64,000 bases of DNA from Macrostomum lignano. Lineage: Eukaryota. The notes beneath the pieces are model-generated. The model saw nothing but the letters and a program-made list of their open reading frames with translations, did not search any database and was not told where the DNA came from. The translations under genes and the position numbers were made by a program. Below are positions 30 to 51,935 of the stretch, piece after piece; position 1 is the first letter of the stretch; the number at the start of each line of letters is the position of its first letter. The DNA lies in contig NIVC01001291.1 of NCBI GenBank assembly GCA_002269645.1, positions 62,001 to 126,000 on the forward strand, written 5' to 3'.

Positions 30-66
30 CTGTCTGTCCGTCTGTCTGTCAGTTGTTGTCTGTCTT

Positions 67-120
<54 letters not shown>

Positions 121-136
121 AGTTGTTGTCTGTCTT

Positions 137-189
<53 letters not shown>

Positions 190-238
190 CCGTCTGTCTG
201 TCAGTTGTTGTCTGTCTTTTTGTCTGTCTGTCTGTCTT

Positions 239-304
<66 letters not shown>

Positions 305-320
305 AGTTGTTGTCTGTCTT

Positions 321-377
<57 letters not shown>

Positions 378-406
378 CCGTCTGTCTGTCAGTTGTTGTC
401 TGTCTT

Positions 407-459
<53 letters not shown>

Positions 460-488
460 CCGTCTGTCTGTCAGTTGTTGTCTGTCTT

Positions 489-541
<53 letters not shown>

Positions 542-570
542 CCGTCTGTCTGTCAGTTGTTGTCTGTCTT

Positions 571-620
<50 letters not shown>

Positions 621-633
621 AGTTGTCTGTCTT

Positions 634-702
<69 letters not shown>

Positions 703-723
703 CTGTCAGTTGTTGTCTGTCTT

Positions 724-780
<57 letters not shown>

Positions 781-801
781 CTGTCAGTTGTTGTCTGTCT
801 T

Positions 802-862
<61 letters not shown>

Positions 863-891
863 CCGTCTGTCTGTCAGTTGTTGTCTGTCTT

Positions 892-985
<94 letters not shown>

Positions 986-1009
986 CGTCTGTCAGTTGTT
1001 GTCTGTCTT

Positions 1010-1082
<73 letters not shown>

Positions 1083-1111
1083 CCGTCTGTCTGTCAGTTG
1101 TTGTCTGTCTT

Positions 1112-1178
<67 letters not shown>

Positions 1179-1181
1179 TAG

Positions 1182-1272
<91 letters not shown>
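30..1272. repeat. (TCTG)n/(GACA)n microsatellite with recurring TCAGTTGTTGTCTGTCTTTT and CCGT variant blocks
   Basis: Directly visible; the ORFs 5..1303, 123..1181, 205..1311 and 471..1292 are its translations (CLSV/QTDR repeats). Confidence 0.97.
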
Positions 1273-3823: not shown

Positions 3824-4080
3824 TCGCACACTGGTCGAGTTGCGAGACAGGAGAATCAGTCAGAAACTTTAACCATTGCAGTTGGGACCTGTTTTATCGA
3901 CTAAAATCTACTCTCTTTAACAAGCTGAGTGGACAAGTCGTATTTATTGGTTTTTATGCTCACAAAAATCCTGTCCCCTAGAAAAATCTATAGTTGTATA
4001 ATCCATACAATTGGAATGCTTACCTGCGAAATATTTAGACTAGCTATCAGGCCATCAATAACTTGAAGCTCGCGCTCCAA

Positions 4081-8803: not shown

Positions 8804-11581
8804 CTAGCTGGCGTCGCTGACTTCGCCTCGACTTATCGACGTGGTCCGCCGACGCCGCCTACTTGAACGATTTCGAGCACTGTCCACCTCGACGTTGGCG
8901 AAAGTCGGCGAGGCGACAGACGAGGCCCGCTCGTCGTCAGCTATGGACGCTGCTGCCGCTGCGGACGAAGAGGACGACGAGGCGGATCCAGAAGCGGCGG
9001 CCATGGCCGAACGCATCGCGACAAAAGCTGCGGGCGCGTGTGCGGACAGCAAGTCCAACAGCATCGCCCGTGTCCGAGCCAGCAGCTCGGCCAGCACCCG
9101 GCTAGGCTGGGCGGACGCCTGCAGCAGAGGCGCCGGGCCGGCAGCCGCCGAGTTTTTGTCCGGCGATGACAGCGCCATGGCGGCGGCGCAGCCGGCTGGC
9201 GAGCTGCCCGACGGTGCCAGCCGGCGGGAGACGGCAACCAGGCGAGCGGCCAGGCGCTCCTCGCTGGCTCGCAGATCGTCAAGTCCGTCGGCGAGGCTGC
9301 AGACCCGCCGGCAGTCGGTCAGGCCCCGGGCCGAGCGGCCCAGCTCGATCGGGCTCGGCCGCTTCGACGGAGGAATTCGGCGGACGTCGGCCGGCCGAAG
9401 GAAATGGCCGAGACGGGCGCGGCCACGGTCGGCCGGAGCCGGACAGAGCTGCTCGGGAGGCAGGAGGCAGGCTCGGGGCCGGCTGAACACCTGTACGGAG
9501 AGGGTTGGGTGATTAACAGAGTAGGGAAATGCAGCTTTGATGAGGCCATTCTACAGCAGTTTGTTCAATTTAAATTCGCGCCAAATAACACATTTTGTTG
9601 ATTGCCACTCAAGACTCGTCCCAGTTTTTTTAGAATAAATTAGCAAAGAAATTCGGTCAGTTGTTTAATGCAGCAGTTTCCATCCCATACTGCTGCAACA
9701 AACTACTAATAATTATATAGCTTTTCCGACAATCTTCAAAATGAAAATCAGCTCTAAGCACAGGGTTGGCAAACTCCGGCCGTTTCTCATCTTCCCTCTC
9801 GTTTCTCATCTCCCCTCTCGTTTCTCATCTCCCCTCTCCTTTCTTATCTCCCCTCTCCTTTCTTATCTCCCCTCTCCTTTCTTATCTCCCCTCTCGTTTC
9901 TCATCTCCCCTCTCGTTTCTCATCTCCCCTCTCCTTTCTCATCTCCCCTGTCCTTTCTCATCTCCCCTCTCCTTTCTCATCTCCCCTCTCCTTTCTCATC
10001 TCCCCTCTCCTTTCTCATCTCCCCTCTCCTTTCTCATCTCCCCTTTCCTTTCTCATCTCCCCTCTCCTTTCTCATCTCCCCTCTCCTTTCTCATCTCCCC
10101 TCTCCTTTCTCATCTCCCCTCTCCTTTCTCATCTCCCCTCTCCTTTCTCATCTCCCCTCTCCTTTCTCACCCCCCTTCTCTCTCAGGTCAAGCAGTGCAA
10201 TCAAACAGCAAAATGGCAACAAACCTGCGGCCTGCAAGGCTCCTCCTGGAGTACCCGCAGCATCCGCCTGTACTGCTCATCCTCCGGACTGCAGGCTGGC
10301 GAGTCCGGCCCGACATTCTCGTGCGACCCCAGCGCAATATCCGCGTCCGCCAGCACCAGCTCCTCCTTTACTAGGCGAATCGGGCCGGCCGTTTGTCCGG
10401 TCGGGACCGGTCGGGTCAGCCGGACGCTGGCCGGAGCCGAGCCAGCTGGCAGCGTCTGGTTCGGCAGCGCCGGCGAGGCGAACGCGGCAGCGGCGGCCGC
10501 GCCAGCTGGAAGCGCCCGACCGCCGCCTGGATCGGCTGGCGGTGGCTGCGAATGATTCTGACGGTACAGCATGGTGGCAGCGCCGGCCGGGGACATTGCG
10601 CTGGATGGTGATGCCGCAGACGCCGGAGTCAATGCAGGCTGAGCCTGCGGCGCCAGCGCTTCGATGCTGCCAGCGGAGGCAGCGGCGGCGGCAGCAGCAG
10701 CGGCGGCCAGCAGCTGGGAAGCGGAGTCCGGCTGCAGCTGCTGTTTCCGGGCCCGCTTTCTCGGACTGGCGTCCGCAGCACCCGCCGGGTCGCCGGCTCG
10801 ATTAGCGCCGGAATTGGCGTTGTTGGCGCCGGCCACGCCCGCCGCCGCAGTGGCAAGTTCAGTGCCGCGTTTGCGCAGAATTGACGGCGCCTGGCGCAGG
10901 CCGAGGCCGGCCTTGCCAGCTGATTGGCTCTGTGCCAGAGGGTCCTGGGCGGCCGCCGCTGCCGCCGCTAATGATTATAAAGTATAGCGCATGGTTAGTT
11001 TAATATTACTAATAGTAGGCTCTGCAAAAGCATATCCACATTCTAATAGAGATATTATCCAAATTCAATTCATAGCCAGATGGTACTAATACTGATACTA
11101 ATATGTAGTACTAACTAGATGACGAGGTATTTAGCCCTTATAGAACAGTCATTGTTACTCCTGCCGTTTACCCAAAATTGCTTTAATTTTGCTCTAGGGT
11201 TTCTTTTACAGGTAAGTCGTATTTTTGGTCAAAAAGTAAGTCGCATGGCCAGTGTAAATCAGGGGGTTGCGCATGTATGAGGACAAACCTGGCGCATTGT
11301 TGGATGAGCGAATTCTAAACTGCAGAATGTCGTCTGTATGCGGCTTGGCCACGGCAGCGATGTGCATGAACTCGCCGGCCGGCCGGCCCACCCCAGCTTG
11401 GCTGTCCGCTCCGGCCGCACCGCCGCCTCCACCGCCGGCAGCGGTTCTGCCGCCGCCAGCCACAGAGATAATGCTAGACGATGCCTGAGTAGTGAGCGAC
11501 AGCAGCTTAGGCAGACCAGTAGCTGGAGGGCCAGCTGGCACAATGCCAGGTGGGTCTGGCTTAGCCGGGGCGCCGCTAGGG
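8804..11581 (-). CDS. SAP130: Sin3/HDAC complex subunit SAP130-like, last three exons (11581-11289, 10967-10225, 9490-8804); 5' end unresolved
   Basis: Phase-compatible junctions CCAG|GTTTGT..CATTAG|CG and CAG|GTTTGT..TACAG|GTG. The protein has SPRKRARKQQ (human SPRKKPRKQQ), RPRACLL, HFLRPADVR..K.P...EL and a terminal helix LAELLARTRAMLLDLL, matching the SAP130 C-terminal domain from memory. First in-exon ATG is at 11367. Confidence 0.72.
9781..10170. repeat. 19-bp pyrimidine-rich minisatellite (CCTTTCTCATCTCCCCTCT)n in SAP130 intron
   Basis: About 20 copies visible. Confidence 0.95.
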
Positions 11582-15039: not shown

Positions 15040-18000
15040 CTACAGAGTTCCGCCTTTGTAAGCTACTCGAATTTCAAACGTCCTGATTTCCATAGGCCTC
15101 AGCGTCATCTCGAGCGACTTGGTGAGCGGTCCCCTGCGAGATTGCTGATCAACTGCCTCTGTCTGCATGGAGCGCCACTTCAGCCGGGTCTGATCCGCCA
15201 GGCGCTGGTTGGCGGACAAATTCAACTCAACGGCATCCAGGATGGCGAACGCGGAAAATGTGGCTCCCAAATCGACTGTGACCGGCCCAGAATGAGCTGA
15301 CGATTCGTTTGCTTGAAAGATGTTCTCCAGCCGGAGTAGCAGTCGGTCGGGACTTTGACGCCAGGGCTCCAGAGTGAGAATCTGGACGCTGTCCGGCAGC
15401 GGAGCGGTCAAGGCGCTCCATTGGCACCAAGCGGAACGCGGCTGCAGCAGCGAGAAAGTCACCAGGGGAGAGCGGTGCCGCTGACTTGCCAGCAAGCGGT
15501 AGCGATCGGCAGAGGCCGCCGGCTCAGCCAGGAAGTACCAGTGGCTGGTCTTCACCACCAGGCCCCGGCCGTCGGAGCCGCGCTCACGCAGGGCTTCGCC
15601 AACGCCAAATCCGTCGTCATCGAGCGTCACTCGGTGCAACATCACGCTGAGCTGGCCTTCGGCTGGTCGCGAGGATGCGGCCGCGGCTCGGTCGGTCAGC
15701 ACCGTCAGCTGACGAGCGGCATCGGCAACGCTGACGATGGCGTTAGCAGGCCGGAACTGGGCGGCCTCTGGCCGGCTGGGGTCTCGCCGAGCCCGCATCA
15801 GCTGGCGGCCGTTCGAGTCCACCAGGAATTCGCCGGATGACGCCGACAGACCGTCGGCTGAATAGACGGCGACAACTTCCCGACCGACACCGTCGTCTAG
15901 CGGTAGCGGACCGACAGTCGACTCGGCTTCTAGATAGTTTGAACTGGCACCCGGATACTGCCTAGTAACCAGGTACGCCCAGTCGTTGTAGTTAAAATGG
16001 GTTTCGTTGACTACGGGACCGATCACTTGGGCTTGAATGCGAGCGGATAGCGTCTGGGGTCGGTCCGTTGTTGGCCTGGGAAATTGTTTCACAGCTCAAG
16101 TACAGTTACGAGCTAAGATTTAGAGTCACGCATCTTAAGACCCACCTCAGTCACTTCAGGAAGCCCCAGATCAGTCACTTCAGGAAGTCCCACATCAGTC
16201 ACTTCAGGAAGTCCCACATCAGTCACTTCAGGAAGCCCCAGATCAGTCACTTCAGGAAGTCCCACATCAGTCACTTCAGGAAGTCCCACATCAGTCACTT
16301 CAGGAAGCCCCAGATCAGTCACTTCAGGAAGTCCCACATCAGTCACCTCAGGAAGTCCCACATCAGTCACTTCAGGAAGCCCCAGATCAGTCACTTCAGG
16401 AAGGCGCTACCAAACTCACCCACCTCAGGCACTTCAAGGGGAAGGAAACAACATACATGTACGACAACTTCCGCTTACACACCTGAACACGTAGGCCCCA
16501 GACGGTCTGAACTGCTCTCCACTAGAGTTGCCGCGCATTCCAATGTAGAACGCCAGACCGACGCTAATTTCCGACGCCGAGCGACCCGCGTTGGTCGTCG
16601 GCAGAATCGGCGTGAACACGGACGCGCCCGGGTCCGTGGAGTTGCACGGCTCCACAGAGTACACAGCGTAGCCTAGCGGAGGAATCGAGGCTACGAAGAA
16701 CGCCAGCTCGTTGACAGCTATCGATAGGTTCCTCTCGGGCACCCGGAGAGTGCCATTGTTCACCGGGATTGTCTGCGAGGTGACAGGGGCTCCGGCTTCA
16801 TCCAGTACGCGGTAGTACCGTCCGGTCACGGGCAGCCTGGCCGAGTGCCAGCTCAATCTGCTGGCCGGATTGTAGAATGTGACGAAGAAGCGTCCGGTAG
16901 CCAGCTCGGACACCGGACAGTAGGACGCGTTCAGCAGCTCGCAGGCGCGCAGGGCGTCCCGCTGGCTGAGGTTGCCGAACTGCAGCTGGGCCAGGCGGGC
17001 CTGCCAGAGCGGGTCGCTTGACGCGATGCCGTCCGACAGGCGCAGGGCGTAGTCAAAGGCGACCGCCTGCTTCTCGGTGCCTGCAGGGGGCGAAGGCATT
17101 GGTATGCTTCTGATTGGGGAAAGCACACTGGAGAATTCTATTTTCTAGAACCTTCTTGATTTCACTAGGACCCTACATTCTCCGTGACATTGACATCCCT
17201 CATTGACATTGGCACCTCTGTTTGACATTGGAACCTCTGCTTGACATTGGAACCTCTGCTTGACATTGGAACCTCTGCTTGACATTGGAGCCTCTGCTTG
17301 ACATTGGAACCTCTGCTTGACATTGGAACCTCTGCTTGATATTGGAACCTCTGCTTGACATTGGAACCTCTGCTTGACATTGGAACCTCTGCTTGACATT
17401 GGAACCTCTGCTTGACATTGGAACCTCTGCTTGACATTGGAACCTCTGCTTGACATTGGAACCTCTGCTTTACATTGGAGCCTCTGCTTGACATTGGAGC
17501 CTCTGCTTGACATTGGAACCTCTGCTTGACATTGGAACCTCTGCTTGATATTGGAACCTCTGCTTGACATTGGAACCTCTGCTTGACATTGGAACCTCTG
17601 CTTGACATTGGAACCTTTGCTTGACATTGGCACCTCTGCTTGACATTGGAACCTCTGCCTGACATTGGAACCTCTGCTTGACATTGGAACCTCTGCTTGA
17701 CATTGGAACCTCTGCTTGACATTGGCACAAAAATACGCTCGTAGGCTGTCAGGGTCTTAAGAAGTCAGTCAGCGTCACAGGGCCAGGTACGGCTGCAAAC
17801 TGAAGGAGTCGCTGACGGCGCAACAGGTCGCTTGGACGGACCAGACCGGCGCGGCGATAGAGTACCGCGTTGGAGACTCGCTTGTGGCCGATCTTGAAAG
17901 CAGCGTGCAGCCTCCGTCAGCGTCCACTGCCTGGTTCGCACCCCACATCTCCTCATACGCCTTACACCTCCTCTAACACCTTACAGCCTCCTCTAACACC

Positions 18001-21000
18001 TCACAGCCTCCTCTAACACCTCACAGCATCCTTTAACACCTTACAGCCTCCTCTAACACCTCACAGCCTCCTCTAACACCTCACAGCCTCCTCTAACACC
18101 TCACAGCCTCCTCTAACACCTCACAGCCTCCTCTAACACCTCACAGCCTCCTCTAACACCTCACAGCCTCCTCTAACACCTCACAGCCTCCTCTAACACC
18201 TCACAGCCTTCTCTAACACCCCAAAGCCTCCTCTTACACCTCACAGCCTCCCCTAACACCTCACAGCCTCCTCTAATACCTCACAGCCTCTTCTAAAAAC
18301 TCACAGCCTTCTCTAACACCTCACAGCCTCCTCTAACACCTCACAGCCTCCTCTAACACCTCACAGCCTTCTCTAACACCTCACAGCCTCCTCTAACACC
18401 TCACAGCCTCCTCTAACACCTCACAGCCTCCTCTAACACCTCACAGCCTCCTCTAACACCCCAAAGCCTCCTCTTACACCTCACAGCCTCCTCTAACACC
18501 TCACAGCCTCCTCTAATACCTGACAGCCTCTTCTAACACCTCACAGCCTCCTCTAACACCTCACAGCCTCCTCTAACACCTCACAGCCTTCTCTAACACC
18601 CCAAAGCCTCCTCTTACACCTCACAGCCTCCCCTAACACCTCACAGCCTCCTCTAATACCTCACAGCCTCTTCTAACACCTCACAGCCTTCTCTAATACC
18701 TCACAGCCTCCTCTAACACCTCACAGCCTCCTCTAATACCTCACAGCCTCTTCTAACACCTCACAGCCTTCTCTAATACCTCACAGCCTCCTCTAACACC
18801 TCACAGCCTCCTCTAACACCTCACAGCCTTCTCTAACACCTCACAGCCTCCTCTAACACCTCACAGCCTCCTCTAACACCTCACAGCCTCCTCTAACACC
18901 TCACAGCCTCCTCTAACACCCCAAAGCCTCCTCTTACACCTCACAGCCTCCTCTAACACCTCACAGCCTCCTCTAATACCTCACAGCCTCTTCTAACACC
19001 TCACAGCCTCCTCTAACACCTCACAGCCTCCTCTAACACCTCACAGCCTCCTCTAACACCTCACAGCCTCTTCTAACACCTCACAGCCTCTTCTAACACC
19101 TCACAGCCTCCTCTAACACCTCACAGCCTCCTCTAACACCCCAAAGCCTCCTCTTACACCTCACAGCCTCCTCTAACACCTCACAGCCTCCTCTAATACC
19201 TCACAGCCTCTTCTAACACCTCACAGCCTCCTCTAACACCTCACAGCCTCCTCTAATACCTCACAGCCTCTTCTAACACCTCACAGCCTCTTCTAACACC
19301 TCACAGCCTCTTCTAACACCTCACAGACTCCTCTAACACCTCACAGACTCCTCGTTTCTCACCAGCCACTGCATCGTGATGCTGCGCCACCCCCTGCGCC
19401 TGCCGCAGGCGGTCCAGCCTCTCCGAGGCGTCGCCGAGCACGGCCGGTCCAACCGCCGCCAGCTGCTTGACCGCCTGCAGGTGGCCGGACGCCCACCTGA
19501 CCAGCCGCTTCAAAGCCGGCCGGCTGCTGTAGAATCCGGTCCAGTAGGAGTTCGGCCCGGACGCGTAGGGAAAAAAGTCGCCAGTCTTCACGGCGTAGGC
19601 GAGGCCCTCATCGTTCACAGCCTTGGTGTAGCAGTCGGGCGAGCTGTAGTAGGCGGTCAGGTTGTGCTGGCTGGTGTTGGCGTTCACAGCCGCAATCAGT
19701 TTGTCAATTATCTTGAAATTCTTCCTGGCATTCTCGTAGGCAAAGTCGCAGCCCATGGTGAGCAGCAAGTGGCTGGTGCGATGAGCCAGCCGGAGGAGGT
19801 CCACCTGCACGATGAACTTCCTGACGGCCTCGGCCACGTTGAAGTCGTGCAGTTGAGGGTCGTCCTGCACCGGCTGGTCGCCGCCTTCGTAGTTGGTGCC
19901 GGGCGGGTAGCAGTAGCCCGACACGAAGTCGCCGGCAAAGATGTCAGCCGAAGGGCTGCCGAGGTCCCGACTGGCGTGCCAAACCTTCGCGAGAGGCGCG
20001 GCGATGATATACACACCAGCCCATCACCTGTGTTACACACCAGCCCATCACCTGTGTTACACACCAGCCCATCACCTGTGTTACACACCAGCCCATCACC
20101 TGTGTTACACACCAGCCCATCACCTGTGTTACACACCAGCCCATCACCTGTGTTACGCACCAGCCCATCACCTGTGTTACGCACCAGCCCATCACCTGTG
20201 TTACACACCAGCCCATCACCTGTGTTACACACCAGCCCATCACCTGTGTTACACACCAGCCCATCACCTGTGTTACACACCAGCCCATCACCTGTGCTAC
20301 AAACCAGCCCATCACCTGTGCTACAAACCAGCCCATCACCTGTGCTACAAACCAGCCCATCACCTGTGTTACACGCCAGCCCATCACCTGTGTTACACAC
20401 CAGCCCATCACCTGTGTTACACACCAGCCCATCAACTGTGTTACACACCAGCCCATCACCTGTGTTACACACCAGCCCAACACCTGTGTTACACACCAGC
20501 CCATCACCTGTGTTACACACCAGCCCATCACCTGTGTTACACACCAGCCCATCACCTGTGTTACACACCAGCCCATCACCTGTGTTACACACCAGCCCAT
20601 CAACTGTGTTACACACCAGCCCATCACCTGTGTTACACACCAGCCCAACACCTGTGTTACACACCAGCCCATCACCTGTGTTACACACCAGCCCATCACC
20701 TGTGTTACACGCCAGCCCATCACCTGTGTTACACACCAGCCCATCACCTGTGTTACACACCAGCCCATCAACTGTGTTACACACCAGCCCATCACCTGTG
20801 TTACACACCAGCCCAACACCTGTGTTACACACCAGCCCATCACCTGTGTTACACACCAGCCCATCACCTGTGTTACACGCCAGCCCATCACCTGTGTTAC
20901 ACACCAGCCCATCACCTGTGTTACACACCAGCCCATCACCTGTGTTACACACCAGCCCATCACCTGTGTTACGCACCAGCCCATCACCTGTGTTACACAC

Positions 21001-23155
21001 CAGCCCATCACCTGTGTTACACACCAGCCCATCACCTGTGTTACACGCCAGCCCATCACCTGTGTTACACACCAGCCCATCACCTGTGTTACACACCAGC
21101 CCATCACCTGTGTTACACACCAGCCCATCACCTGTGTTACACACCAGCCCATCACCTGTGTTACACACCAGCCCATCACCTGTGTTACACACCAGCCCAT
21201 CACCTGTGTTACACACCAGCCCATCACCTGTGTTACACACCAGCCCATCACCTGTGTTACACACCAGCCCATCACCTGTGTTACACACCAGCCCATCACC
21301 TGTGTTACACACCAGCCCATCGCCTGTTTACTCTCTCCCTACCACTGCTGCACACTCTCCCTACCACTGTTGCACACTCTCTCCCCTGCTGCACACTCTC
21401 ACCCCTGCTGCACACGGACGAGTCATCCAGTCCAATGACTCACAAACTGCATTCTCCTCGTTATCACTCTCTGCACTTCATCCAGGAAGTGAATCCGAGC
21501 AAAGTAGAAGGCGTCCAGCCCCATCTGAGCTAGCAGGGCGGCGAACTCTTTGCTGTGGCCGAACGGATCAATTTGCCAGCCGACTCTCGGCCTGGCGCAG
21601 TCGCCGAACGTGTCATTCAAGAAGCGCATCCCCAGGGTCTGCTGGTCCACAATGTCCGCGTAGTGCGTGGTGGCTTCGTCGTTCATGCACCAGCCGCCCT
21701 GGGCGAAGTGCAGCTGCCCGTTGGCAACCAGTTGGCGGACCTGACCGAGGTGGACGAATTTAAAACATTTTTTGCGCTTCACTTTGCTACTTTAAGTAGG
21801 AATGATGGCTTTCAGCTGATTTTTTTCTTGTGAGTTTAGTAACAATCGAAATGGGAGCAACTAAATGACAAATTGGCAACTAATTGAGCAATTGGCAACT
21901 AATTGAGCAATTGGCAACTAATTGAGCAATTGGCAACTAATTGACTAATTGGCAACTAATTGACTAATTGGCAACTAATTGACTAATTGGCAACTCATTG
22001 ACTGCCGACAGTTTGACAGATTGATCTAATAGGGTTTAGGTTAGGGTTAGGTACATGTATTAGGCAAGGTTTAAGGTTTAGGGACTAGGGTTAGTAAGGG
22101 TTTAAGGATAGGATTAAGGTTAGGTTAAGGTTAGGGTTTATGGTTGGGAGATATGGGTAAGGGATTAGGGTTGGGTTAGGGATTAGGGTTGGGTTAGGGA
22201 TTAGGGTTGGGTTAGGGATTAGGGTTGGGTTAGGGATTAGGGTTGGGTTAGGGATTAGGGTTGGGTTAGGGATCAGGGTTGGGTTAGGGATCAGGGTTGG
22301 GTTAGGGATCAGGGTTGGGTTAGGGATCAGGGTTGGGTTAGGGATCAGGGTTGGGTTAGGGATTAGGGTTGGGTTAGGGATTAGGGTTGGGTTAGGGATT
22401 AGGGTTGGGTTAGGGATCAGGGTTGGGTTAGGGATTAGGGTTGGGTTAGGGATCAGGGTTGGGTTAGGGATTAGGGTTGGGTTAGGGATCAGGGTTGGGT
22501 TAGGGATTAGGGTTGGGTTAGGGATCAGGGTTGGGTTAGGGATTAGGGTTGGGCTAGGGATCAGGGTTGGGTTAGGGATTAGGGTTGGGTTAGGGATCAG
22601 GGTTGGGTTAGAGATTAGGGTTGGGTTAGGGATTAGGGTTGGGTTAGGGATTAGGGTTATGTTCTGCAGTCAATTCGTGGCATTCATGTGTCACAGACCC
22701 AACAGAAATAAAACCTGCATCATCTAATCGATAATCCATGGGGCAGTTTTTTCTGAGGTCCTGAGCTTGACCCCGAGATCTAGCACCTTTAACTTGTCAT
22801 TGCTGTCAATGTGAATTCGCACCTGGTCCCTAGTGGAATTACTCTGCTCCCGCCACCATCGATAAAAAAATGCCATCTCGACATAAGTGAATTTCCTCTT
22901 GGAATCGAGGCTCAGCTCGCGAATGACATTGTCCAGAATGAACTGCACTCTGTAGTAATAGTACTGGTCCACCGTCCGCAGCCAGCCAACATCGTCGTGA
23001 GTGTGCGGCACAATGTGCAGGTTCACTCGGCGAGGCACAGCAGCGGGACAGCCGTTGTAGCCGCAGCTGGCGCTTGTCGCTGCAGCTCCGGGCACTTCAG
23101 CTGCTGTCAGCAGCAGCAGCAGCAGCGACGGCAGAAGTGCAGTGTGCATCTTCAT
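15040..23155 (-). CDS. MAN2B1: Lysosomal alpha-mannosidase (GH38), 5 exons: 23155-22823, 21740-21444, 19984-19363, 17080-16483, 16075-15040; about 960 aa
   Basis: Signal peptide; HTHDDVGWL zinc site; WQIDPFGH nucleophile; MGCDF acid/base; [10 protein letters not shown]; QHHDAVAG; SGAYVFRP; TDRA/HR motifs. All four introns are GT-AG with consistent phases 0,0,1,2. Confidence 0.95.
16141..16404. repeat. 24-bp minisatellite (CAGTCACTTCAGGAAGTCCCACAT)n in mannosidase intron 4
   Basis: About 11 copies with a periodic GCCCCAGAT variant. Confidence 0.95.
17205..17728. repeat. 19-bp minisatellite (TTGACATTGGAACCTCTGC)n in mannosidase intron 3
   Basis: About 27 copies visible. Confidence 0.95.
17760..17940 (-). 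mobile_element. Decayed non-LTR retrotransposon (RTE-like) 3' fragment in mannosidase intron 3
   Basis: Reverse complement aligns with 33050-33220 (TGGACGCTGACGGA, TTCAAGATCGGC, ATCGCCGCGCC, CTGTTGCGCCGTC). Confidence 0.7.
17958..19352. repeat. 20-bp minisatellite (TCACAGCCTCCTCTAACACC)n in mannosidase intron 3
   Basis: About 70 copies; begins about 10 nt inside the intron donor. Confidence 0.96.
20010..21322. repeat. 24-bp minisatellite (ACACACCAGCCCATCACCTGTGTT)n in mannosidase intron 2
   Basis: About 54 copies; source of the [16 protein letters not shown] pseudo-ORFs. Confidence 0.96.
21868..21998. repeat. Short 19-bp tandem repeat (AATTGAGC/ACTAATTGGCAACT) in mannosidase intron 1
   Basis: About 6-7 copies. 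Confidence 0.85.
22031..22639. repeat. Interstitial telomere-like array, 18-bp unit ATTAGGG-TTGGG-TTAGGG, in mannosidase intron 1
   Basis: Directly visible; degenerate TTAGGG-like lead-in from about 22031, regular array from about 22160. Confidence 0.93.
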
Positions 23156-23938: not shown

Positions 23939-26225
23939 TGACAGAAGATAGCAAACAATGCACTAAGGTGACAGTAAACTCACCAAGTATAAGCAAATGA
24001 TACAATGCTCTATCTTTTATGACGATTAAAATGAGATATTGCAATAATTATACACGAATTTAAAAATGTTTGTCTTACATTTAGGAATAATGCGAGACCA
24101 TCGAGACTGTGTTAAGGAGCGACTGATTTGTACATGTTTATACGCGTGTGCGGAAAAGAGTGAAACTGAAAAGTGATAAGATAAAATGTTATGTACAATT
24201 AAGACGCATATTTGCCGTTGTCGACACAACTTTCAAAGGCCTATAGATAATGCATAGTAGCCCAAAAGTATTGCACTAATGGGTGACGAGGTATCGTCCC
24301 GCTGTTTACTTTTTTTGAAAGCAAAAACACTTGCAATTGCCAGGATTGGCATGAATAAAACTGCAAATGCACCCAACAGAGGGACAGAGAGTGGCGAATG
24401 GCATATACATATGTATTGCATCTGCAGTTTGGACTGTTTTCAACCATACAGCTGAATAATAATAGAGGTAAGAGAGCTGCTTGTAGATGAATGCAGCTCA
24501 ACAAAGTTTTTAGTTTGATATTCGAAAATTGCAGCATGCGCTTGCATTCGCAGAGTGAGGGATGAATAGTATTAATATATGCTCACTATATGCCACACAA
24601 TTGCCAGCTTATAATCAACACAATAGGCCAAAAATGAAGCTCACTGCAACCACCTGCTACTTTAAAACCCCCCTCCCCTGTTGATGTGACTGAAATATTC
24701 GACTCACCTATATAATAAACTAATATACAAATAATGCCCATAAAAACTGCTGAACTATTATTATGAAGCAATGCCTGCACGCGGTGGCTATTCAAGTCAA
24801 ATCTTCTTCAACCAGGTGCTCCGGCGCCGGTGTGCATATGCCTTCCATCTCATTCTTAAAAAGCTTGAGTTCTTGAAGAATGGCAGAGCACACGGAGAGA
24901 AGCACAAAGCAGCTAACAGTATGAGCTGCCCGTGTTTAGCCTGGGGGTGCAGGGCTGGGCGGGTCCGCTAAGGCGGCACGCAGCTGCAACAGCAAAAGCA
25001 GCCCCTCCACACCACTCCGACGTGCTCAGCCAGGCGCGTCTGCTTGCCTCACTCGGAGAAGAAAAATGCAGTCGTGATCGCCTGCAGCCATAATAGCGAG
25101 CACTGCATTGTTCTGACCCAGCCCCAGCCCGCTGTCATAACCCTCTCCCTCTCTCCCCCCGAAGAACTCCAAGACCCAACAATGAGGCGGTGAGGGTCAG
25201 GCGACGGTCGCGGCCCCCCAAACTGCACAGCACTGGCCACGCACACAGCCGCCCGCCGTGAGGAGCCCTATAAGTAGGACCGAGCTGAGCCCAGAGCTAA
25301 ACTTAAAGAGCTCGGAGCTTCAGCTTGACTATTACAGCGGCTTATTAGTATATTCTACTACTATAGCCAGCCTGACAGACCAAAACAGATCCGGTAGCGC
25401 TGGGCGAGCAGGTGACATGCGAAGACTGCAATAGCAATATTTAATCTCAATTGTTGCAAATTGCGCAATAAAAAAGCGCCTAAAATCGTATTGCACCTTC
25501 CCCGCTCAAACGCTATCGGATTAAATCGGCCAGTCAACAATACATAATATTGGAGATTCCCAGTCGTAATGCAATACCAATAACAAACTTTTCAATTCCC
25601 CATTATTTCAGGTTTCCACAACACACCTGCGCACTTCAAGAGAGACAATGAAGAAAACAGCAATAACACAACATCATTTAATAAACGTGTATATTTAACA
25701 CCGCTAAGTTGAGAAATTATATTTGATATAGTAGTGTATTTTTTTACTTTTCAACGCTCTAGCATTACTCATTGCTAGTAGTATGATGCGGGCTAGATAG
25801 ACAAGGGCAGTGCAGGATGTAGAGAAATGGAGACTGACAGCAACAGATGATGCGTATTTAATGAATTTTTACAGCAGAGATGACCGACTGCGCTAAAAAC
25901 GGGGAACAGAACAGAAATAAGTGCCGCGATGACAAAATCGCATAATTTTAAGAGAGCTAATCAGCAATCAACTTTTACAGTTACATTTGTACTAATCAAC
26001 TATGGCTGAAGGTATATCAGCATAACTTGACAGTTGAAAAGAGAAAAACAAATTTATACAAAACAGTTCAATTTGACAGATTGGCTAAATAATAAAAAAT
26101 TACTTGATTAAAAAACGGCCAAACTTTTAGTATGAAAAATGTAGCTATTTAGCAATAATTTTGCCCTGCTGCCACGCTGTAATTAATGAGTTAATTTAGT
26201 CAAAGAAAACCCGGGGATTCGGGCC

Positions 26226-27241
26226 TTAGCCACTCTTGCCCTGCGGCACAGCCGGCAAGCTGCCCTTCTTCTTCAGCAACACAGGATGGATAGAGGGCAG
26301 CACGCCGCCAAAGCTGATGTGCACGTGCTTCAACAGTTCGTTCAGTTCGGCGTCGTTGCGCACGCCTAGCATGATGTGCCTGGGCGTGACGGTCTTCCTC
26401 TTGTTAGCCCTGGCAGCGTTGCCTGCATGTTGGCGTTTTGTGCGGAGCGGGGGGAGAACAAATCTAAGCTTGACTTGCTACTGATAAGTAGCACCATTGG
26501 CGCATGGGAGAAAAAGAATGCATTTTTTTCAGTCCTGTTGAGCTTGAACCGTCATGAGCTTAGGTCCGTGATTTAGAATTTTATCATCATAGAGTTACTA
26601 GTAATAGTTCACTGGGCTGGGGTAATGAAGCTACTCTGCTAAGCGGCTGGATTCCAAGTGCAATCACAATAATTTTGGAGCTAAATTGGAATCTCGGCTT
26701 GGCTCTGCTTGCGCAATTAACGCGGCTTTGAGGCCCACAACCAGGGCACAGTGAAGTGTTCATGCCTAAATATAAGTGCGTACGCATCCGCGCGCTTGTG
26801 TGCCTGCTCAGGGGAGTCGGTGGAATGGGCAGCAACGCATCTCGCCGGTTGTGACCTTAAGTGTCGCTTAAAGTGCGCCAGGGTGCACACAGGTCCCCTG
26901 ACTCTAATAAAAGTAGAGAGCTACGCTGATTCCCCTTAGTAGCAATCATTCATTCTAAACTAATATGATATGCAAAATTATTATATCATATTACCGTGTA
27001 CACATTCAACGGCTTGAGTAGAGCTCTTACCGCTTAGTTCGTTGACCTCCGCAACCAGGTACTCCATGACGGCGGCAAGGTAGACGCTGGCGCCGACGCT
27101 AACTTTCTTACCGTAGCGACCGAGTTTCAGGTAGCGATGAACCCTAGCAACCGGCATAACTAGTCCGGCGCGAGACGATTTGCTTTTCTGCTGCTTTCCA
27201 GTAGATTTTCTGGCAGCTTTACCACCGGCACGACCAGACAT
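26226..27241 (-). CDS. H2A: Divergent, intron-containing histone H2A variant (exons 27241-27031 and 26422-26226; 135 aa)
   Basis: [27 protein letters not shown]|NAAR.NK, TPRHI, RND.EL, GGVLP.IHP.LL.KK. Phase-1 intron AGCG|GTAAG..TGCAG|GCAAC rejoins the Gly codon. Confidence 0.92.
26529..26590 (-). ncRNA. C/D-box snoRNA (copy 1) in the H2A intron, predicted 28S rRNA 2'-O-methylation guide
   Basis: Minus strand: C box ATGATGA ... GGTTCAAGCTCAACAGGA-CTGA (D box). The 14-nt guide is complementary to the conserved LSU rRNA motif CCUGUUGAGCUUGA. Confidence 0.8.
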
Positions 27242-27349
27242 GATTGGCTAACTCGATCAGCTGGAATTATTAAATAGAAGATGCGGCGTTTGCAGTAACA
27301 ACTTGTTTGGTTTTAAAATGAATTGATAGTTAACAAATTGAATAGATTC

Positions 27350-27412
27350 TCAGTCCTGTTGAGCTTGAACCATCACTGTTTTTGTAGTTCAGGTTAAGAA
27401 TTTTATCATCAT
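27350..27412 (-). ncRNA. C/D-box snoRNA (copy 2) upstream of the H2A ATG, probably in a 5'UTR intron or outron
   Basis: Minus strand: ATGATGA-TAAAATTCTTAAC-CTGA(D')-ACTACAAAAACAG-TGATG(C')-GTTCAAGCTCAACAGGA-CTGA(D); an acceptor-like TTCCAG lies about 90 nt downstream. Confidence 0.83.
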
Positions 27413-29570
27413 GATATTTAGATAGAATATTAAAGATAGATATATCTGTAAACATTACTATAGTTAGTTTAGGTAATAATAAAAAAAATAAATGCCCAAA
27501 CTAATTGGATTTTTAATAACCTGCAGGGTTGAGGCAGTGGGATGGGAACCAAAGATGCAAGATTCAAAAGCTTTCTACAGAATAAGAGGCAATAGCATTG
27601 GAAAGATTTGTCAGCATAGTTTAATATTAATACATTATAGTCAAGGTGGTATAGTACATATCATGGTCCCATAAAACTATAAAGTACCATAGAAAGTGAC
27701 TTTGTTAGAAAATTCTGGCATATTTTTGCCTTTAACTAAGAATCTTAGTGTATATAATTTTGGGTTTAATATTAGCATATAGTTGGTATGCAAAAATGGC
27801 CCATTTTCCAGTTTTTGCATTTATGGTATAACTGGACATTGATCAAAGAAAACTTAAAAAAGGAAGCTAAAATAAAAATAATGTCCAACTTACAAAGAAA
27901 AAAAAATTATAGAAATAAAATGACACTTCCATACTTTAATAAAACATCTTGCTTCTGAAAGAATGTATAAAAAGTTGGCATAGAAATTTTATATATGCAC
28001 TAATGAACTAGGGAGGGGTGATAAAATCTGGATTGTAGGAGGCTAGAATTCCTATGAATTATTCAAAACTTTTAAACAAATGACAGCAGATAACAAAGCA
28101 TAATATGATGTAAAGAAAAAATAGTAAGCCACAAAATTTTTGAAAGGTATAGTATAGTATAATATTAAGAATAAAAGGTGCTCCATATGACAATTATTAT
28201 TGTAGCCAAAAAAATATATATATATTCACTAAAAGTTATTTTATCAAAAAATTGTGTTTTTGGTTTTGTTCATAACTTTTATTATTTCTTTCTTAATTTA
28301 ATTTTGATATATTTTTCTATTAAAAACATTTAGACATTTTTTGACTTACATTTTATAGCATTCTACAATAATTATGGCTATGGTTATGGGAAATTTAGGG
28401 TGGCACTTTTTCAAGCAAAATTTGATTACAGACTGCAACTATGGAGATCTTGCCAATTGGCAAAGATATGGTTATGGATTATAGAGATTTGGAGCATCAT
28501 ATATAATTTCTTGTAACAATATAAATCAAGCAGAATTTTTTTTGTAAAAAAGGTTTATTTTATTTAAATTTTTATATTTTTGGCTAAAAAAATAAACACA
28601 ATATTGGCTATCTCATATAAAATGCATCTATATTTATAGTACCAAACTAAACATACCTAAATCTAAGAGTTTTTGCTTTTTGTTTAATTGCTTTTGCTTT
28701 GTCTTCACATTTTGGTCTTTGCCTTTGAAAATTAGGGTTTTTTGTTAATTTATAATTTGGCTACAAAAAAAATGGAATACAGAGATTTGACTAATTTTGG
28801 CTACAAAGATAAAAAGGTATAACAATACAATAGAGCATTATATTTTACCACTATTTTTTAATTATTGTGTATCTACATTTACAAGTCCTACTTTCAGTAC
28901 TTTATAGGAAAAATACACTCTAAAAGTCAAAGCATTTATCACAACAAAACAGTCAACTTTTTTACTCTTAAATCTATTTTTATAAACAAAATATTTATTT
29001 AAACTTCTCAATAAGATATATATAATTAAGTGCAATAATTCAATTTTTAATTTTAAAAATCTTACTAGAGTCTCTAAAATAAACTAAGTATGCATTAGCC
29101 TTGCATGCCAAAAGTAGGTATACACAATTGGCATGCATCACACCTAAGAAAATATTATGCATGGATGTATTATGCGCTTTAAAAAATCATGCAAAAAAGT
29201 TATTGTGAAGTAGAAAAAAAGATGAAAAAAGTTCATTTCTAAGTATAAATTTCAAGCTTTCTAGTTTTTTAGTACGTAACAAAATAGTTAATAAAATCTT
29301 TGAGTATCAATTCTTTTCAATAAATAATATTGCCAAAAAGTAAAAAAATTATCAAATTATCTCCCAAAAAGGTTCATTACACAATCGAAAAAGATCTTTT
29401 ATTGTCATAATATTGGCATAGTTATAAGAATGGGCATACACTCCATTTTTAATATAGGCCACTATATTTGTAAATATTCAATTTTTATTCAGGTGTGCAC
29501 CCAGCATGATCTAGATTCTAGACTATGGCTATATGGGGCCTAATAATATATAATATAGCTTAGACCCTAA

Positions 29571-32894: not shown

Positions 32895-32989
32895 CTGGTG
32901 TCTGACGTTCGCAAGGACCTGCGACGACGTCGCCGTGGACTAGCCCTGCCTTTTGTTCCGTGAGGGCTGTCCTGCAGTCCGAGGCCCTG

Positions 32990-33400
32990 CCTGACCGCCA
33001 GAGGGCGGCGTTGTCCCAGGCAGTGATCGATACCGTCCTGTTGTACGACGCCGAGACCTGGACGCTGACGGAATCGCTCGAACAGCAGGTCGATGCGGCG
33101 CACGCTGACTTGCTGCTCGCCGCCTTCAAGATCGGCTACGAGCGAGTCACCAATGCGGCACTCCATCGCCGCGCCAGCCTGTTCCGTCCCAGCGAACTGT
33201 TGCGCCGTCGGCGACTCCAGCTGGTTGGCCATATCATGAGCCGAGTTTACTGGCCGCAGCCGGTGCAGGAGGTGCTGCTGCTGACGCAGCCCTGTGGGGA
33301 CAGGGCGCGCATTCGGCTGCCGGCGGTGCGGCCTACATTTGCGCCCAGCCCTCAAACGCGCCCTAGCTGTGACATTGTCTCACGCCTGACTGGCTGACAA
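32990..33400 (+). mobile_element. 5'-truncated non-LTR retrotransposon fragment (RTE-like, post-RT C-terminus)
   Basis: LLYDAETWTLT...VTNAALHRR....SELLRRRRLQLVGHI matches the LLYG.ETWTL..., V.N..L..R, RRL...GH pattern of RTE-clade ORFs; a second copy lies at 17760-17940. Confidence 0.78.
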
Positions 33401-36937: not shown

Positions 36938-38684
36938 TTCACAAGCATCAGACTCACATCTCAAACCTGTTCACAAGCATCAGACTCACATCTCAAACCT
37001 GTTGACAAGCATCAGACTCACATCTCAAATCAGTTCACAAGCATCAGACTCACATCTCAAACCTGTTCACAAGCATCAGACTCACATCTCAAACCAGTTC
37101 ACAAGCATCAGACTCACATCTCAAACCTGTTCACAAGCATCAGACTCACATCTCAAACCTGTTCACAAGCATCAGACTCACATCTCAAACCTGTTCACAA
37201 GCATCAGACTCACATCTCAAACCAGTTCACAAGCATCAGACTCACATCTCAAACCTGTTCACAAGCATCAGACTCACATCTCAAACCTGTTCACAAGCAT
37301 CAGACTCACATCTCAAACCTGTTCACAAGCATCAGACTCACATCTCAAACCTGTTCACAAGCATCAGACTCACATCTCAAACCTGTTCACAAGCATCAGA
37401 CTCACATCTCAAACCTGTTCACAAGCATCAGACTCACATCTCAAACCAGTTCACAAGCATCAGACTCACATCTCAAACCAGTTCACAAGCATCAGACTCA
37501 CATCTCAAACCAGTTCACAAGCATCAGACTCACATCTCAAACCAGATCACAAGCATCAGACTCACATCTCAAACCTGTTCACAAGCATCAGACTCACATC
37601 TCAAACCAGTTCACAAGCATCAGACTCACATCTCAAACCAGTTCACAAGCATCAGACTCACATCTCAAACCAGATCACAAGCATCAGACTCACATCTCAA
37701 ACCAGTTCACAAGCATCAGACTCACATCTCAAACCAGTTCACAAGCATCAGACTCACATCTCAAACCAGATCACAAGCATCAGACTCACATCTCAAACCA
37801 GATCACAAGCATCAGACTCACATCTCAAACCAGTTCACAAGCATCAGACTCACATCTCAAACCAGTTCACAAGCATCAGACTCACATCTCAAACCAGTTC
37901 ACAAGCATCAGACTCACATCTCAAACCTGTTCACAAGCATCAGACTCACATCTCAAACCTGTTCACAAGCATCAGACTCACATCTCAAACCAGTTCACAA
38001 GCATCAGACTCACATCTCAAACCAGATCACAAGCATCAGACTCACATCTCAAACCAGTTCACAAGCATCAGACTCACATCTCAAACCAGATCACAAGCAT
38101 CAGACTCACATCTCAAATCAGTTCACAAGCATCAGACTCACATCTCAAACCAGTTCACAAGCATCAGACTCACATCTCAAACCAGTTCACAAGCATCAGA
38201 CTCACATCTCAAACCAGTTCACAAGCATCAGACTCACATCTCAAACCAGTTCACAAGCATCAGACTCACATCTCAAACCAGTTCACAAGCATCAGACTCA
38301 CATCTCAAACCAGTTCACAAGCATCAGACTCACATCTCAAACCTGTTCACAAGCATCAGACTCACATCTCAAACCAGTTCACAAGCATCAGACTCACATC
38401 TCAAACCAGTTCACAAGCATCAGACTCACATCTCAAACCAGTTCACAAGCATCAGACTCACATCTCAAACCAGTTCACAAGCATCAGACTCACATCTCAA
38501 ACCAGTTCACAAGCATCAGACTCACATCTCAAACCTGTTCACAAGCATCAGACTCACATCTCAAACCAGTTCACAAGCATCAGACTCACATCTCAAACCA
38601 GTTCACAAGCATCAGACTCACATCTCAAACCAGTTCACAAGCATCAGACTCACATCTCAAACCAGTTCACAAGCATCAGACTCA
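36938..38684. repeat. 32-bp minisatellite (CACAAGCATCAGACTCACATCTCAAACCAGTT)n
   Basis: About 54 copies; source of the 566-aa pseudo-ORF. Confidence 0.96.
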
Positions 38685-39297
38685 ATACTCATAATTGCAT
38701 GAAGCTTTCCGCATTAAAAAATGTCTCCATCATCCAGCTCTCCATCGTCTCGCTCACTAAAAAGCCGGAACCCAGAACGCATCCCCGGTAGCAAAGCGGT
38801 GGTGAAGCTTGCTGTCGTGTTTGTCCCATCCTACCCTGTGCTGCGGCCCCGCCCTTTCGAACGTAGCGCAGCTCTTCTCAAGCTTGCTCAGCTCAAATTC
38901 CCCAGTTGCCGTGCTCAGCTCACGGATGCAGGGACGAGCTGGCGAATGCCGCTCAGTCAGGCAGGCAGGCGGGGGGCAACAGCGAGGTTGAGTGAAAATC
39001 GGTTGCGATAGTCAGCCAGTGAGCTTCTCAACGGGAGAGGCAATGCAATGAAAATAAGTCAGAGGAAAAATCTTAACTGCCTTTGAAGAAAATGTAAAAA
39101 CGTAAGAAGCAAATGGCTGCATGGCGTAGCGAGTCAGACTTCAAAGAGGATTTATGATCCTGAGCGCTCATTAGTTTTCATTGAGTAGTGCCGCTTTTTT
39201 ATTGAGATTTGTTGGGGAAGTTTCCCGTTTCAATGGGAATAATGATTAAAATTGAAGTCTGCGTTGGGGACAGAGGTAGAAAATAGAAAATGTAGTA

Positions 39298-42498: not shown

Positions 42499-51935
<9,437 letters not shown>

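What the first reader, a model, noticed from the sequence alone, without database searches (positions are those of the whole stretch)
26529..27412. A histone variant gene hosting a duplicated C/D snoRNA that targets 28S rRNA
Seen: two 62-63-nt copies on the H2A sense strand, one in the coding intron (about 106 nt from the acceptor) and one about 90 nt before the acceptor preceding the ATG. They share the first 16 nt (ATGATGATAAAATTCT) and last 22 nt (GGTTCAAGCTCAACAGGACTGA) while the middle has diverged, a pattern of selection on boxes and guide. Known: the guide is antisense to the conserved LSU motif GACCCUGUUGAGCUUGACUC near the peptidyl-transferase region, and the D+5 rule predicts 2'-O-methylation of the G in CCUGUU. 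Typical hosts are ribosome or translation genes, so a histone variant host would be unusual and would couple a chromatin variant to ribosome modification. The conserved TAAAATTCT after box C may be a second, unassigned guide.
Basis: partly seen in the sequence, partly recalled or inferred. Interest (0 to 1): 0.82.

Follow-up and report, generated by a model that had tools for sequence, protein, structure and literature searches.

The report
Two snoRNA copies in flatworm H2A gene
A divergent histone H2A gene of the flatworm Macrostomum lignano carries two copies of an ordinary-looking box C/D small nucleolar RNA that should direct a sugar methylation on 28S rRNA; relatives elsewhere sit in translation genes, so only the host gene is unusual.

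Summary
Two 62/63-nt elements lie on the minus strand at 26529-26590 and 27350-27412. They share box C plus 9 nt and an 18-nt guide plus box D, while their flanks are only randomly alike.

They are very probably real box C/D snoRNAs. A 14-nt guide is antisense to the LSU motif CCUGUUGAGCUUGA, and the D+5 rule points to the G of CCUG. A metagenome scan found about 20 more C/D snoRNAs with the same guide in unidentified eukaryotes. A model built only from those finds exactly these two copies (E 1e-9 and 3e-7).

The window is Macrostomum lignano. The host is a flatworm-specific divergent H2A. One copy is firmly in its coding intron.

The other copy lies 89 nt before a TTCCAG acceptor upstream of the ATG. 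That site fits the species' spliced-leader acceptor motif but is not kept in two other assembly copies, so it could be a 5'UTR intron, an outron or a separate gene.

Orthologous H2A genes of Schistosoma, Echinococcus, Paragonimus and one unnamed relative lack the snoRNA. Same-guide snoRNAs elsewhere sit in eIF4G-like, RPL12, BTF3 and W2-domain genes. The histone host therefore looks like a lineage-specific relocation, not a functional coupling.

The target is not a mapped site in yeast, human, fly or Dictyostelium. This is a new member of a known kind, of modest interest.

The parts
27350..27412 (-). Upstream box C/D snoRNA copy (63 nt). Box C AUGAUGA 27412-27406; 5' (D') guide UAAAAUUCUUAAC 27405-27393; box D' CUGA 27392-27389; box C' UGAUGG 27375-27370; 14-nt rRNA-antisense core UCAAGCUCAACAGG 27368-27355; box D CUGA 27353-27350.
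   Evidence: Sequence. Full-length match, 34.5 bits and E 1.2e-9, to model R1, which was built only from environmental same-guide snoRNAs. Weak Rfam C/D hits: SNORD36 20.8 bits, SNORD50, DdR1.
26529..26590 (-). Intron box C/D snoRNA copy (62 nt). Box C 26590-26584; shared 5' element UAAAAUUCU 26583-26575; possible degenerate D' CGGA 26568-26565; C' UGACGG 26554-26549; antisense core 26547-26534; box D 26532-26529.
   Evidence: Sequence. Full-length match to R1, 26.7 bits, E 3.3e-7. A weak snoZ107_R87 hit covers the guide only.
27031..27241 (-). H2A coding exon 1 (ATG at 27241-27239; 211 nt).
   Evidence: The spliced translation is 100% identical to M. lignano BOX15_Mlig005952g1. Pfam hits Histone and Histone_H2A_C. 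The annotated gene spans 1016 nt in NIVC01001291.1, and the window is identical to that contig.
26423..27030 (-). Coding intron (608 nt, GTAAGA...CAG, phase 1) that holds the intron snoRNA copy. The copy lies 440 nt from the donor and 106 nt from the acceptor.
26226..26422 (-). H2A coding exon 2 (197 nt, stop TAA at 26228-26226).
27261..27266 (-). TTCCAG acceptor-like site 19 nt before the ATG and 89 nt after the upstream copy. It fits the M. lignano SL trans-splice acceptor motif [T/C]TNCAG.
   Evidence: Sequence; motif from PMC8629364. The AG is replaced by CATG or TGCATG in assembly copies L002 and L003, so its use is unproven.
27519..27520 (-). Candidate cis donor (CAG|GTTATT) after a short, GC-richer possible non-coding exon 1. 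If it is used, the upstream copy lies in a 259-nt 5'UTR intron.
   Evidence: Sequence only. The GT is kept in L003. It is a weak match to the GT[G/A]AG donor motif reported for the species.

Best explanation
These are two paralogous box C/D snoRNA genes of Macrostomum lignano on the sense strand of a flatworm-specific divergent H2A gene.

Inferred mechanism: Pol II transcribes the H2A pre-mRNA. The intron copy is released by splicing, and probably also the upstream copy, from a 5'UTR intron or an outron. Exonucleases then trim each to the ends protected by the Snu13/Nop56/Nop58/fibrillarin core bound at the C/D kink-turn. The 14-nt element just upstream of box D pairs with 28S rRNA at CCUGUUGAGCUUGA. 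That places the G of CCUG opposite the fifth guide nucleotide, where fibrillarin 2'-O-methylates it. The site is in helix 74, next to the peptidyl-transferase ring (E. coli G2067 / yeast G2409 equivalent).

The H2A gene serves only as an expression vehicle.

Shown here: the sequence anatomy, the gene structure, the species, and homologues with the same guide elsewhere. Inferred: expression, processing, methylation, and the presence of the motif in this species' 28S.
For: Canonical box C (AUGAUGA) and box D (CUGA) lie 62-63 nt apart in both copies. The upstream copy also has D' CUGA and C' UGAUGG.

Thirty-eight nucleotides (boxes, guide, 9-nt 5' element) are identical between the copies, while the flanks are 25% identical. 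That pattern is selection, not recent copying.

The 14-nt antisense match abuts box D. It stops on both sides exactly where complementarity to rRNA stops, so it is not an rDNA fragment.

A metagenome scan for guide + N + CTGA gave 56 matches on 52 contigs. Twenty-five of the matches, on 23 contigs, have a box C (RTGATG[A/T/C]) within 80 nt upstream. Most of those are 58-64 nt long in total, and many have terminal stems.

The base next to box D varies (A/G/C/U), as expected for the unpaired position 1.

Model R1, built from 14 of these without any M. lignano sequence, finds precisely the two copies, end to end. The scores are 34.5 and 26.7 bits, and the next hit scores 7 bits.

The intron copy lies 106 nt before the acceptor of a verified coding intron. 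This is close to the preferred position of intronic C/D snoRNAs (PMC8162545).

Two copies per host gene also occur in environmental relatives L056 and L065.
Against: There are no expression or methylation data.

Terminal stems are minimal, 2 bp and 1 bp. The intron copy lacks a consensus D' and has C' UGACGG. No Rfam family reaches its threshold.

The predicted Gm is absent from the Nm maps of yeast, human, Drosophila and Dictyostelium that I could read. The site's use therefore rests on guide conservation only.

The match of R1 over guide and box D is partly by construction, because the scan pattern selected those bases.
Confidence: 0.78

Rival explanations
1. Only the intron copy is processed from the H2A transcript. 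The upstream copy is a separate unit: either an independently transcribed snoRNA gene in the H2A promoter-proximal region, or RNA released from the outron of an SL-trans-spliced pre-mRNA rather than from a cis intron.
For: TTCCAG|C fits the SL trans-acceptor motif, and about 30% of M. lignano genes are trans-spliced. The only candidate cis donor (GTTATT) is weak. The AG is not kept in assembly copies L002 and L003, which read CATG and TGCATG, the same bases as the 3' end of the SL ...TTGCATG.
Against: There are no RNA data. The L002/L003 differences could be real polymorphism that merely resembles the SL tail, or a polishing artefact. The 89-nt spacing to the AG is what a splicing-dependent C/D snoRNA would show. 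I found no precedent for outron-derived snoRNAs in a quick literature check.
Confidence: 0.4
2. One copy, most likely the intron copy, is a decaying paralogue that is no longer assembled into a stable snoRNP. The other copy does the work.
For: The intron copy has no CUGA D', a C' of UGACGG and essentially no terminal stem. It scores lower against R1, 26.7 against 34.5 bits.
Against: Box C, box D, the full 18-nt guide and the 9-nt 5' element are untouched although the flanks have randomised. D'/C' boxes are commonly degenerate. Environmental relatives also carry CGGA, CGAA or CAUA at the D' position.
Confidence: 0.15
3. These are not functional RNAs. They are chance motifs, a repeat or retroposed snoRNA relics, or a fragment of rDNA in antisense.
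For: There is no Rfam hit at gathering score. There is no thermodynamic fold signal, z 0.64 and -0.30, although none is expected for C/D snoRNAs.
Against: There are only two copies in 64 kb, with selective conservation. The rRNA complementarity ends at 14 nt, so this is not an rDNA insert. The same guide and box arrangement recurs in unrelated eukaryotic contigs inside introns of translation genes. R1 gives E-values of 1e-9 and 3e-7.
Confidence: 0.04

Closest known systems
Unnamed same-guide box C/D snoRNAs found here in environmental eukaryote contigs (for example L017, L019, L047, L053, L056, L058, L060, L065, L066; L020/L026/L049/L061; GC-rich L025, L029)
   Same: They share the identical 14-nt antisense element directly before box D. 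Most are about 58-64 nt long and have a C' box just upstream of the guide and a D'-like CNNA 12-15 nt after box C. Some have two copies per host gene. L066 also has a similar 5' element (UGAAAUUCAUAUC-CGGA).
   Different: Their hosts are translation-related genes: MA3/eIF4G-like, uL11/RPL12, NAC/BTF3 and W2-domain. The M. lignano host is an H2A. Their taxa are unknown. None of them matches an Rfam family either.
snR78 / SNORD52 (U52) and snR66, the guides for yeast 25S Um2421 (human Um3904) and Um2417
   Same: They target the same conserved LSU stretch, GACCCUGUUGAGCUUGACUC. They have the same class and mechanism (table in PMC8817022; my numbering check).
   Different: They methylate different nucleotides, the U residues 8 and 12 nt downstream of the G predicted here. 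Their guides differ and share no sequence similarity with this one beyond the boxes.
Rfam RF00360 snoZ107_R87 (plant C/D snoRNA)
   Same: It contains the same antisense string, UUCAAGCUCAACAG.
   Different: The score is 12-15 bits against a gathering score of 50. The guide lies in the 5' half of a 117-nt RNA and is not followed by CUGA, so the targeted nucleotide may differ. I could not establish its target from the literature.
snR67 / SNORD31 (U31), guide for the universally conserved P-loop Gm2619 (human Gm4166, E. coli Gm2251)
   Same: It is a C/D guide for a Gm near the peptidyl-transferase centre.
   Different: It is a different site, about 210 nt downstream in yeast numbering. I considered this identity and rejected it.

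Membership tests
Box C/D snoRNA (2'-O-methylation guide) | Box C (RUGAUGA) near the 5' end and box D (CUGA) at the 3' end | tested here: met
   AUGAUGA and CUGA are present in both copies, 62/63 nt end to end.
Box C/D snoRNA (2'-O-methylation guide) | Terminal stem bringing C and D together (kink-turn stem I) | tested here: inconclusive
   Only 2 bp (upstream copy) and 1 bp (intron copy) of flank pairing are present. Environmental relatives often have 4-5 bp. Short stems are tolerated in well-positioned intronic snoRNAs.
Box C/D snoRNA (2'-O-methylation guide) | Internal D' and C' boxes | tested here: met
   The upstream copy has CUGA and UGAUGG. The intron copy has degenerate forms (CGGA?, UGACGG).
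Box C/D snoRNA (2'-O-methylation guide) | An antisense element of at least 10 nt directly upstream of D or D', with the target opposite the fifth nucleotide | tested here: met
   There are 14 contiguous Watson-Crick pairs to CCUGUUGAGCUUGA at positions 2-15 from box D. Position 5 is C, opposite G. The rRNA motif is taken from general knowledge, not from this species' 28S.
Box C/D snoRNA (2'-O-methylation guide) | Intronic position about 70-100 nt upstream of a 3' splice site (animals) | tested here: met
   The intron copy lies 106 nt before a verified acceptor. The upstream copy lies 89 nt before an unverified AG.
Box C/D snoRNA (2'-O-methylation guide) | A stable small RNA bound by fibrillarin, Nop56, Nop58 and Snu13, with the target actually methylated | not testable with these tools
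   No RNA or methylation data were available. The planarian RiboMeth-seq study lists 28S sites only up to position 1600 and none in this region.
Any curated Rfam C/D family (SNORD36, SNORD50, DdR1, SNORD51, snoZ107_R87) | Score at or above the family's gathering threshold | tested here: not met
   The best score is 20.8 bits against 30 for SNORD36. The others score 10-19 bits against 36-75.
   Scores are 34.5 bits (E 1.2e-9) and 26.7 bits (E 3.3e-7), covering model positions 1-60 of 60. The guide and box D part is favoured by the way the family was collected.
Histone H2A (host gene), flatworm-specific divergent clade | Histone fold plus H2A C-terminal domain, and closest relatives restricted to Platyhelminthes | tested here: met
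   Pfam Histone and Histone_H2A_C. Identity is 100% to the M. lignano protein and 73-82% to the closest relatives (the named ones are Schistosoma, Echinococcus, Paragonimus and other flatworms). It is about 54-67% to H2As of other phyla.

The most novel reading that the evidence does not exclude
The upstream copy is matured from the outron of an SL-trans-spliced H2A pre-mRNA. I found no description of that route of snoRNA biogenesis. In addition, the snoRNA belongs to an uncurated, widespread family that defines an rRNA 2'-O-methylation site (helix 74 G, E. coli 2067 equivalent) missing from all model-organism maps.
Probability: 0.2. Interest if true: 0.5.

Novelty: new member of a known kind. 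Interest (0 to 1): 0.3.

Why it matters
M. lignano has no published snoRNA annotation that I could find. These would be usable first entries with a testable target.

The finding also shows that a guide family absent from Rfam and from the yeast, human, fly and Dictyostelium maps is shared by many uncultured eukaryotes. That points to an unmapped Nm site beside the peptidyl-transferase ring.

The histone host illustrates how freely intronic snoRNAs move between highly expressed genes. It gives no reason to think that chromatin and ribosome modification are linked.

If the upstream copy proves to be outron-derived, it would add a processing route for trans-splicing animals.

Tried and rejected
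1. Rfam at gathering score on the window, the M. lignano loci, the orthologous loci and the environmental contigs found nothing for these elements. E-value mode gave only sub-threshold C/D hits.

2. I first suspected the target was the P-loop Gm (snR67/U31) or a U58 site. I rejected this after reading the site tables and counting positions.

3. Orthologous H2A loci were checked: Schistosoma spp. L005-L008, Echinococcus L009, Paragonimus L014 and an unnamed relative L004. None has the guide (up to 2 mismatches allowed). In the loci scanned for it (L004, L005, L009, L014), no strict C/D candidate lies in the gene. The P0002 contigs are spliced transcripts and say nothing about introns.

4. The three M. 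lignano assembly copies are near-identical recent duplicates, so they say nothing about constraint.

5. Taxon identification of the eIF4G-like host contigs returned only unnamed metagenome proteins.

6. I looked for a target of the 5' element UAAAAUUCU(U/A)A. I found no convincing complement in the conserved rRNA or snRNA stretches I know. The nearest, the SNORD36-type site GUGAAGAAAUUC, has 3 mismatches in 13. Without this species' rRNA the question stays open.

7. The GC-rich 330-nt block in the coding intron shows no fold signal (z 0.07).

8. Literature searches for snoR87/Z107 and for At G2399/G2404 led nowhere. The planarian RiboMeth-seq study was uninformative for this site.

Full report
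**What is there.** On the minus strand the window encodes a two-exon H2A gene. The ATG is at 27241, exon 1 runs to 27031, a GT-AG intron spans 27030-26423, and exon 2 runs 26422-26226. The spliced 135-aa product is 100% identical to Macrostomum lignano BOX15_Mlig005952g1. It has the Histone and Histone_H2A_C domains. The window is base-for-base identical to contig NIVC01001291.1 of assembly GCA_002269645.1 over the 9 kb compared. The protein is 73-82% identical to its closest relatives; the named ones are H2As of other flatworms (Schistosoma, Echinococcus, Paragonimus and others). It is about 54-67% identical to H2As of other phyla. "Divergent, flatworm-specific H2A" is therefore a fair description.

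**The repeat.** The two elements are 26590->26529 (62 nt, in the coding intron) and 27412->27350 (63 nt, upstream of the ATG). Their first 16 nt and last 22 nt are identical. Each block occurs only twice in the window, even with mismatches allowed, and no shuffle reached two matches. The middle is about half alike. The 40-nt flanks on both sides match at 10/40, which is random. Box motifs alone are common: there are 68 RTGATGA motifs in the window, and 7 are followed by CTGA at a suitable distance. The evidence therefore lies in the selective conservation and in the guide.

**Anatomy.**
- Upstream copy: AUGAUGA (C) - UAAAAUUCUUAAC - CUGA (D') - 13 nt - UGAUGG (C') - U - UCAAGCUCAACAGG - A - CUGA (D).
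- Intron copy: the same C box, the same first 9 nt after it, the same guide and the same D box. Its D' is degenerate (perhaps CGGA) and its C' is UGACGG.

Terminal stems are minimal, 2 bp and 1 bp. Neither copy folds better than shuffles, which is normal for C/D snoRNAs because their guides must stay single-stranded.

**The guide.** Positions 2-15 upstream of box D are perfectly complementary to CCUGUUGAGCUUGA. Complementarity to the rRNA motif GACCCUGUUGAGCUUGACUC stops on both sides, so this is not an inserted piece of rDNA. The fifth guide nucleotide (C) faces the G of CCUG.

**Which rRNA site.** I first thought this might be the universally conserved P-loop Gm (yeast Gm2619, snR67/U31). 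The site tables show that it is not. The motif contains yeast Um2417 (snR66) and Um2421 (snR78; human Um3904, U52). That count reproduces 2417 and 2421 correctly and places the predicted G at yeast position 2409. By my own alignment to E. coli this is G2067, at the start of helix 74 next to the central loop of domain V. That alignment rests on my own knowledge and was not tested with a tool.

No Nm at this position appears in the Dictyostelium, yeast, human and Arabidopsis comparison table or in the Drosophila map. The planarian RiboMeth-seq study lists 28S sites only up to position 1600, so it says nothing about this region. I did not have the 28S of M. lignano. Its possession of the motif is inferred from universal conservation.

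**Independent support from other organisms.** I scanned public metagenome contigs for TCAAGCTCAACAGGNCTGA. The scan returned 52 contigs with 56 matches. About half are GC-rich, prokaryote-like chance hits. Twenty-five matches, on 23 contigs, have a box C (RTGATG[A/T/C]) within 80 nt upstream, where about one would be expected by chance. Most of these are 58-64 nt long, and many have 4-5-bp terminal stems. The base next to box D varies freely (A/G/C/U), as expected for the unpaired position 1. None extends the pairing past the 14 nt.

These snoRNAs lie in introns of genes whose exons match the following families:

| Pfam family | Likely gene | Contigs |
|---|---|---|
| MA3 | eIF4G-like | L047, L053, L056, L066 |
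| Ribosomal_L11_N | RPL12 | L020 group |
| NAC | BTF3 | L065 |
| W2 | W2-domain gene (eIF5/eIF4G/eIF2B-epsilon family) | L029 |

L056 and L065 carry two copies each. Their taxa could not be named. None hits an Rfam family.

I built a sequence profile from 14 of these snoRNAs, with no M. lignano sequence in it. It finds exactly the two window elements, end to end, at 34.5 bits (E 1.2e-9) and 26.7 bits (E 3.3e-7). The next hit scores 7 bits. The guide and box D part of that score is favoured by how the family was collected. Box C, the C' box and the spacing are independent of that selection.

**Is the histone host conserved?** No. The orthologous H2A loci of four Schistosoma species, Echinococcus granulosus and Paragonimus kellicotti, and an 81%-identical relative from an SRA assembly, contain no copy of the guide even with two mismatches allowed. 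In the loci scanned for it (L004, L005, L009, L014), no strict C/D candidate lies in the gene. The relative's coding sequence is intronless.

The three M. lignano loci all carry both copies. They are near-identical recent duplicates and carry no information about constraint. Taken with the translation-gene hosts seen elsewhere, the simplest reading is that an ordinary snoRNA relocated into an intron-bearing gene in the Macrostomum lineage, and that the gene is presumably well expressed. I found no literature on histone-variant hosts. Nothing here suggests a regulatory link between the histone and the ribosome.

**Where exactly is the upstream copy?** In the window it lies 89 nt before TTCCAG|CTGATCG..ATG. 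That hexamer fits the [T/C]TNCAG motif reported for M. lignano spliced-leader acceptors. About 30% of the species' genes are reported as SL-trans-spliced (PMC8629364). A possible cis donor (CAG|GTTATT, 27520) follows a short, GC-richer stretch, but it is a poor match to the reported GT[G/A]AG donor.

In the two other assembly copies the AG is absent. L002 reads ...TTCATG|CTG and L003 reads ...AATGCATG|CTG. These bases equal the 3' end of the SL (...TTGCATG). There are three possible explanations:
- consensus polishing with SL-bearing RNA reads;
- a short retro-conversion;
- coincidental polymorphism; two of only five differences between L002 and the window across ~26200-27660 (the gene, its intron and ~420 bp of upstream sequence) fall here.

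The first two would imply trans-splicing at this junction and would put the snoRNA in an outron. I could not decide among a 5'UTR intron, an outron and an independent gene. I found no described case of an outron-derived snoRNA.

**The 5' element.** UAAAAUUCU is conserved between the copies although the sequence after it has diverged. In the upstream copy it sits in front of a perfect D' box. One environmental relative (L066) has a similar string followed by CGGA, as in the intron copy. It is therefore plausibly a second guide. I found no convincing target among the conserved rRNA and snRNA segments I know. The D' positions differ by 2 nt between the copies, so a shared target nucleotide is not obvious.

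**Verdict.** The unusual host is real for the intron copy, but it is lineage-specific and probably incidental. The "coupling" idea has no support. This is a new member of a known kind, belonging to a guide family that is widespread but uncurated.

Noticed in passing
window 27261-27266; L002 and L003 at 3976-3981: The acceptor-like TTCCAG before the H2A ATG reads TTCATG in contig NIVC01001135 and AATGCATG in NIVC01002491. Both match the last 4-6 nt of the M. lignano spliced leader (...TTGCATG). This could be an RNA-read polishing artefact, a retro-conversion or a coincidence.
   Followed up: partly
L017, L019, L020, L025, L026, L029, L039, L042, L044, L046, L047, L049, L050, L053, L054, L056, L058, L060, L061, L065, L066: Uncultured eukaryotes in public metagenomes carry box C/D snoRNAs with the same 14-nt LSU guide. 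They sit in introns of eIF4G-like, RPL12, BTF3 and W2-domain genes. None matches an Rfam family, and the implied Nm site is absent from model-organism maps.
   Followed up: partly
L046:1237-1312 (-): The contig where the guide appears to sit in the D' position (only 44 nt from box C to the CTGA, with a TGATGA just downstream) also holds an snR61/Z1/Z11-family snoRNA (47.6 bits). This suggests a plant- or protist-style snoRNA cluster.
   Followed up: no
window 26595-26925 (-): A GC-rich block of about 330 nt lies inside the otherwise AT-rich H2A coding intron. It shows no fold signal (z 0.07) and no Rfam hit. Its origin is unknown.
   Followed up: partly
window 15040-23155 (-): A GH38 alpha-mannosidase gene lies about 3 kb downstream of the H2A gene on the same strand. 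One of its introns holds a 1.4-kb tandem array (about 19.9-21.3 kb).
   Followed up: partly
window 42499-43452 (+); 53889-54254 (-); 58777-61840 (-): Other genes in the window are a rhodopsin/Srw-type GPCR, a single-domain rhodanese and an innexin (two exon-sized ORFs with Pfam hits).
   Followed up: partly
window 1-1300, 9741-10400, 16068-16500, 17145-17728, 37002-38702, 45127-45650, 50301-51600, 54423-55200, 58200-58742, 59950-61500: Numerous long micro- and minisatellite arrays produce spurious long ORFs in all frames. They make up a large share of the window.
   Followed up: no
window 32960-33397 (+): An ORF whose sequence looks to me like the C-terminal part of a non-LTR retrotransposon reverse transcriptase. 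It has no Pfam hit at E <= 0.001.
   Followed up: partly
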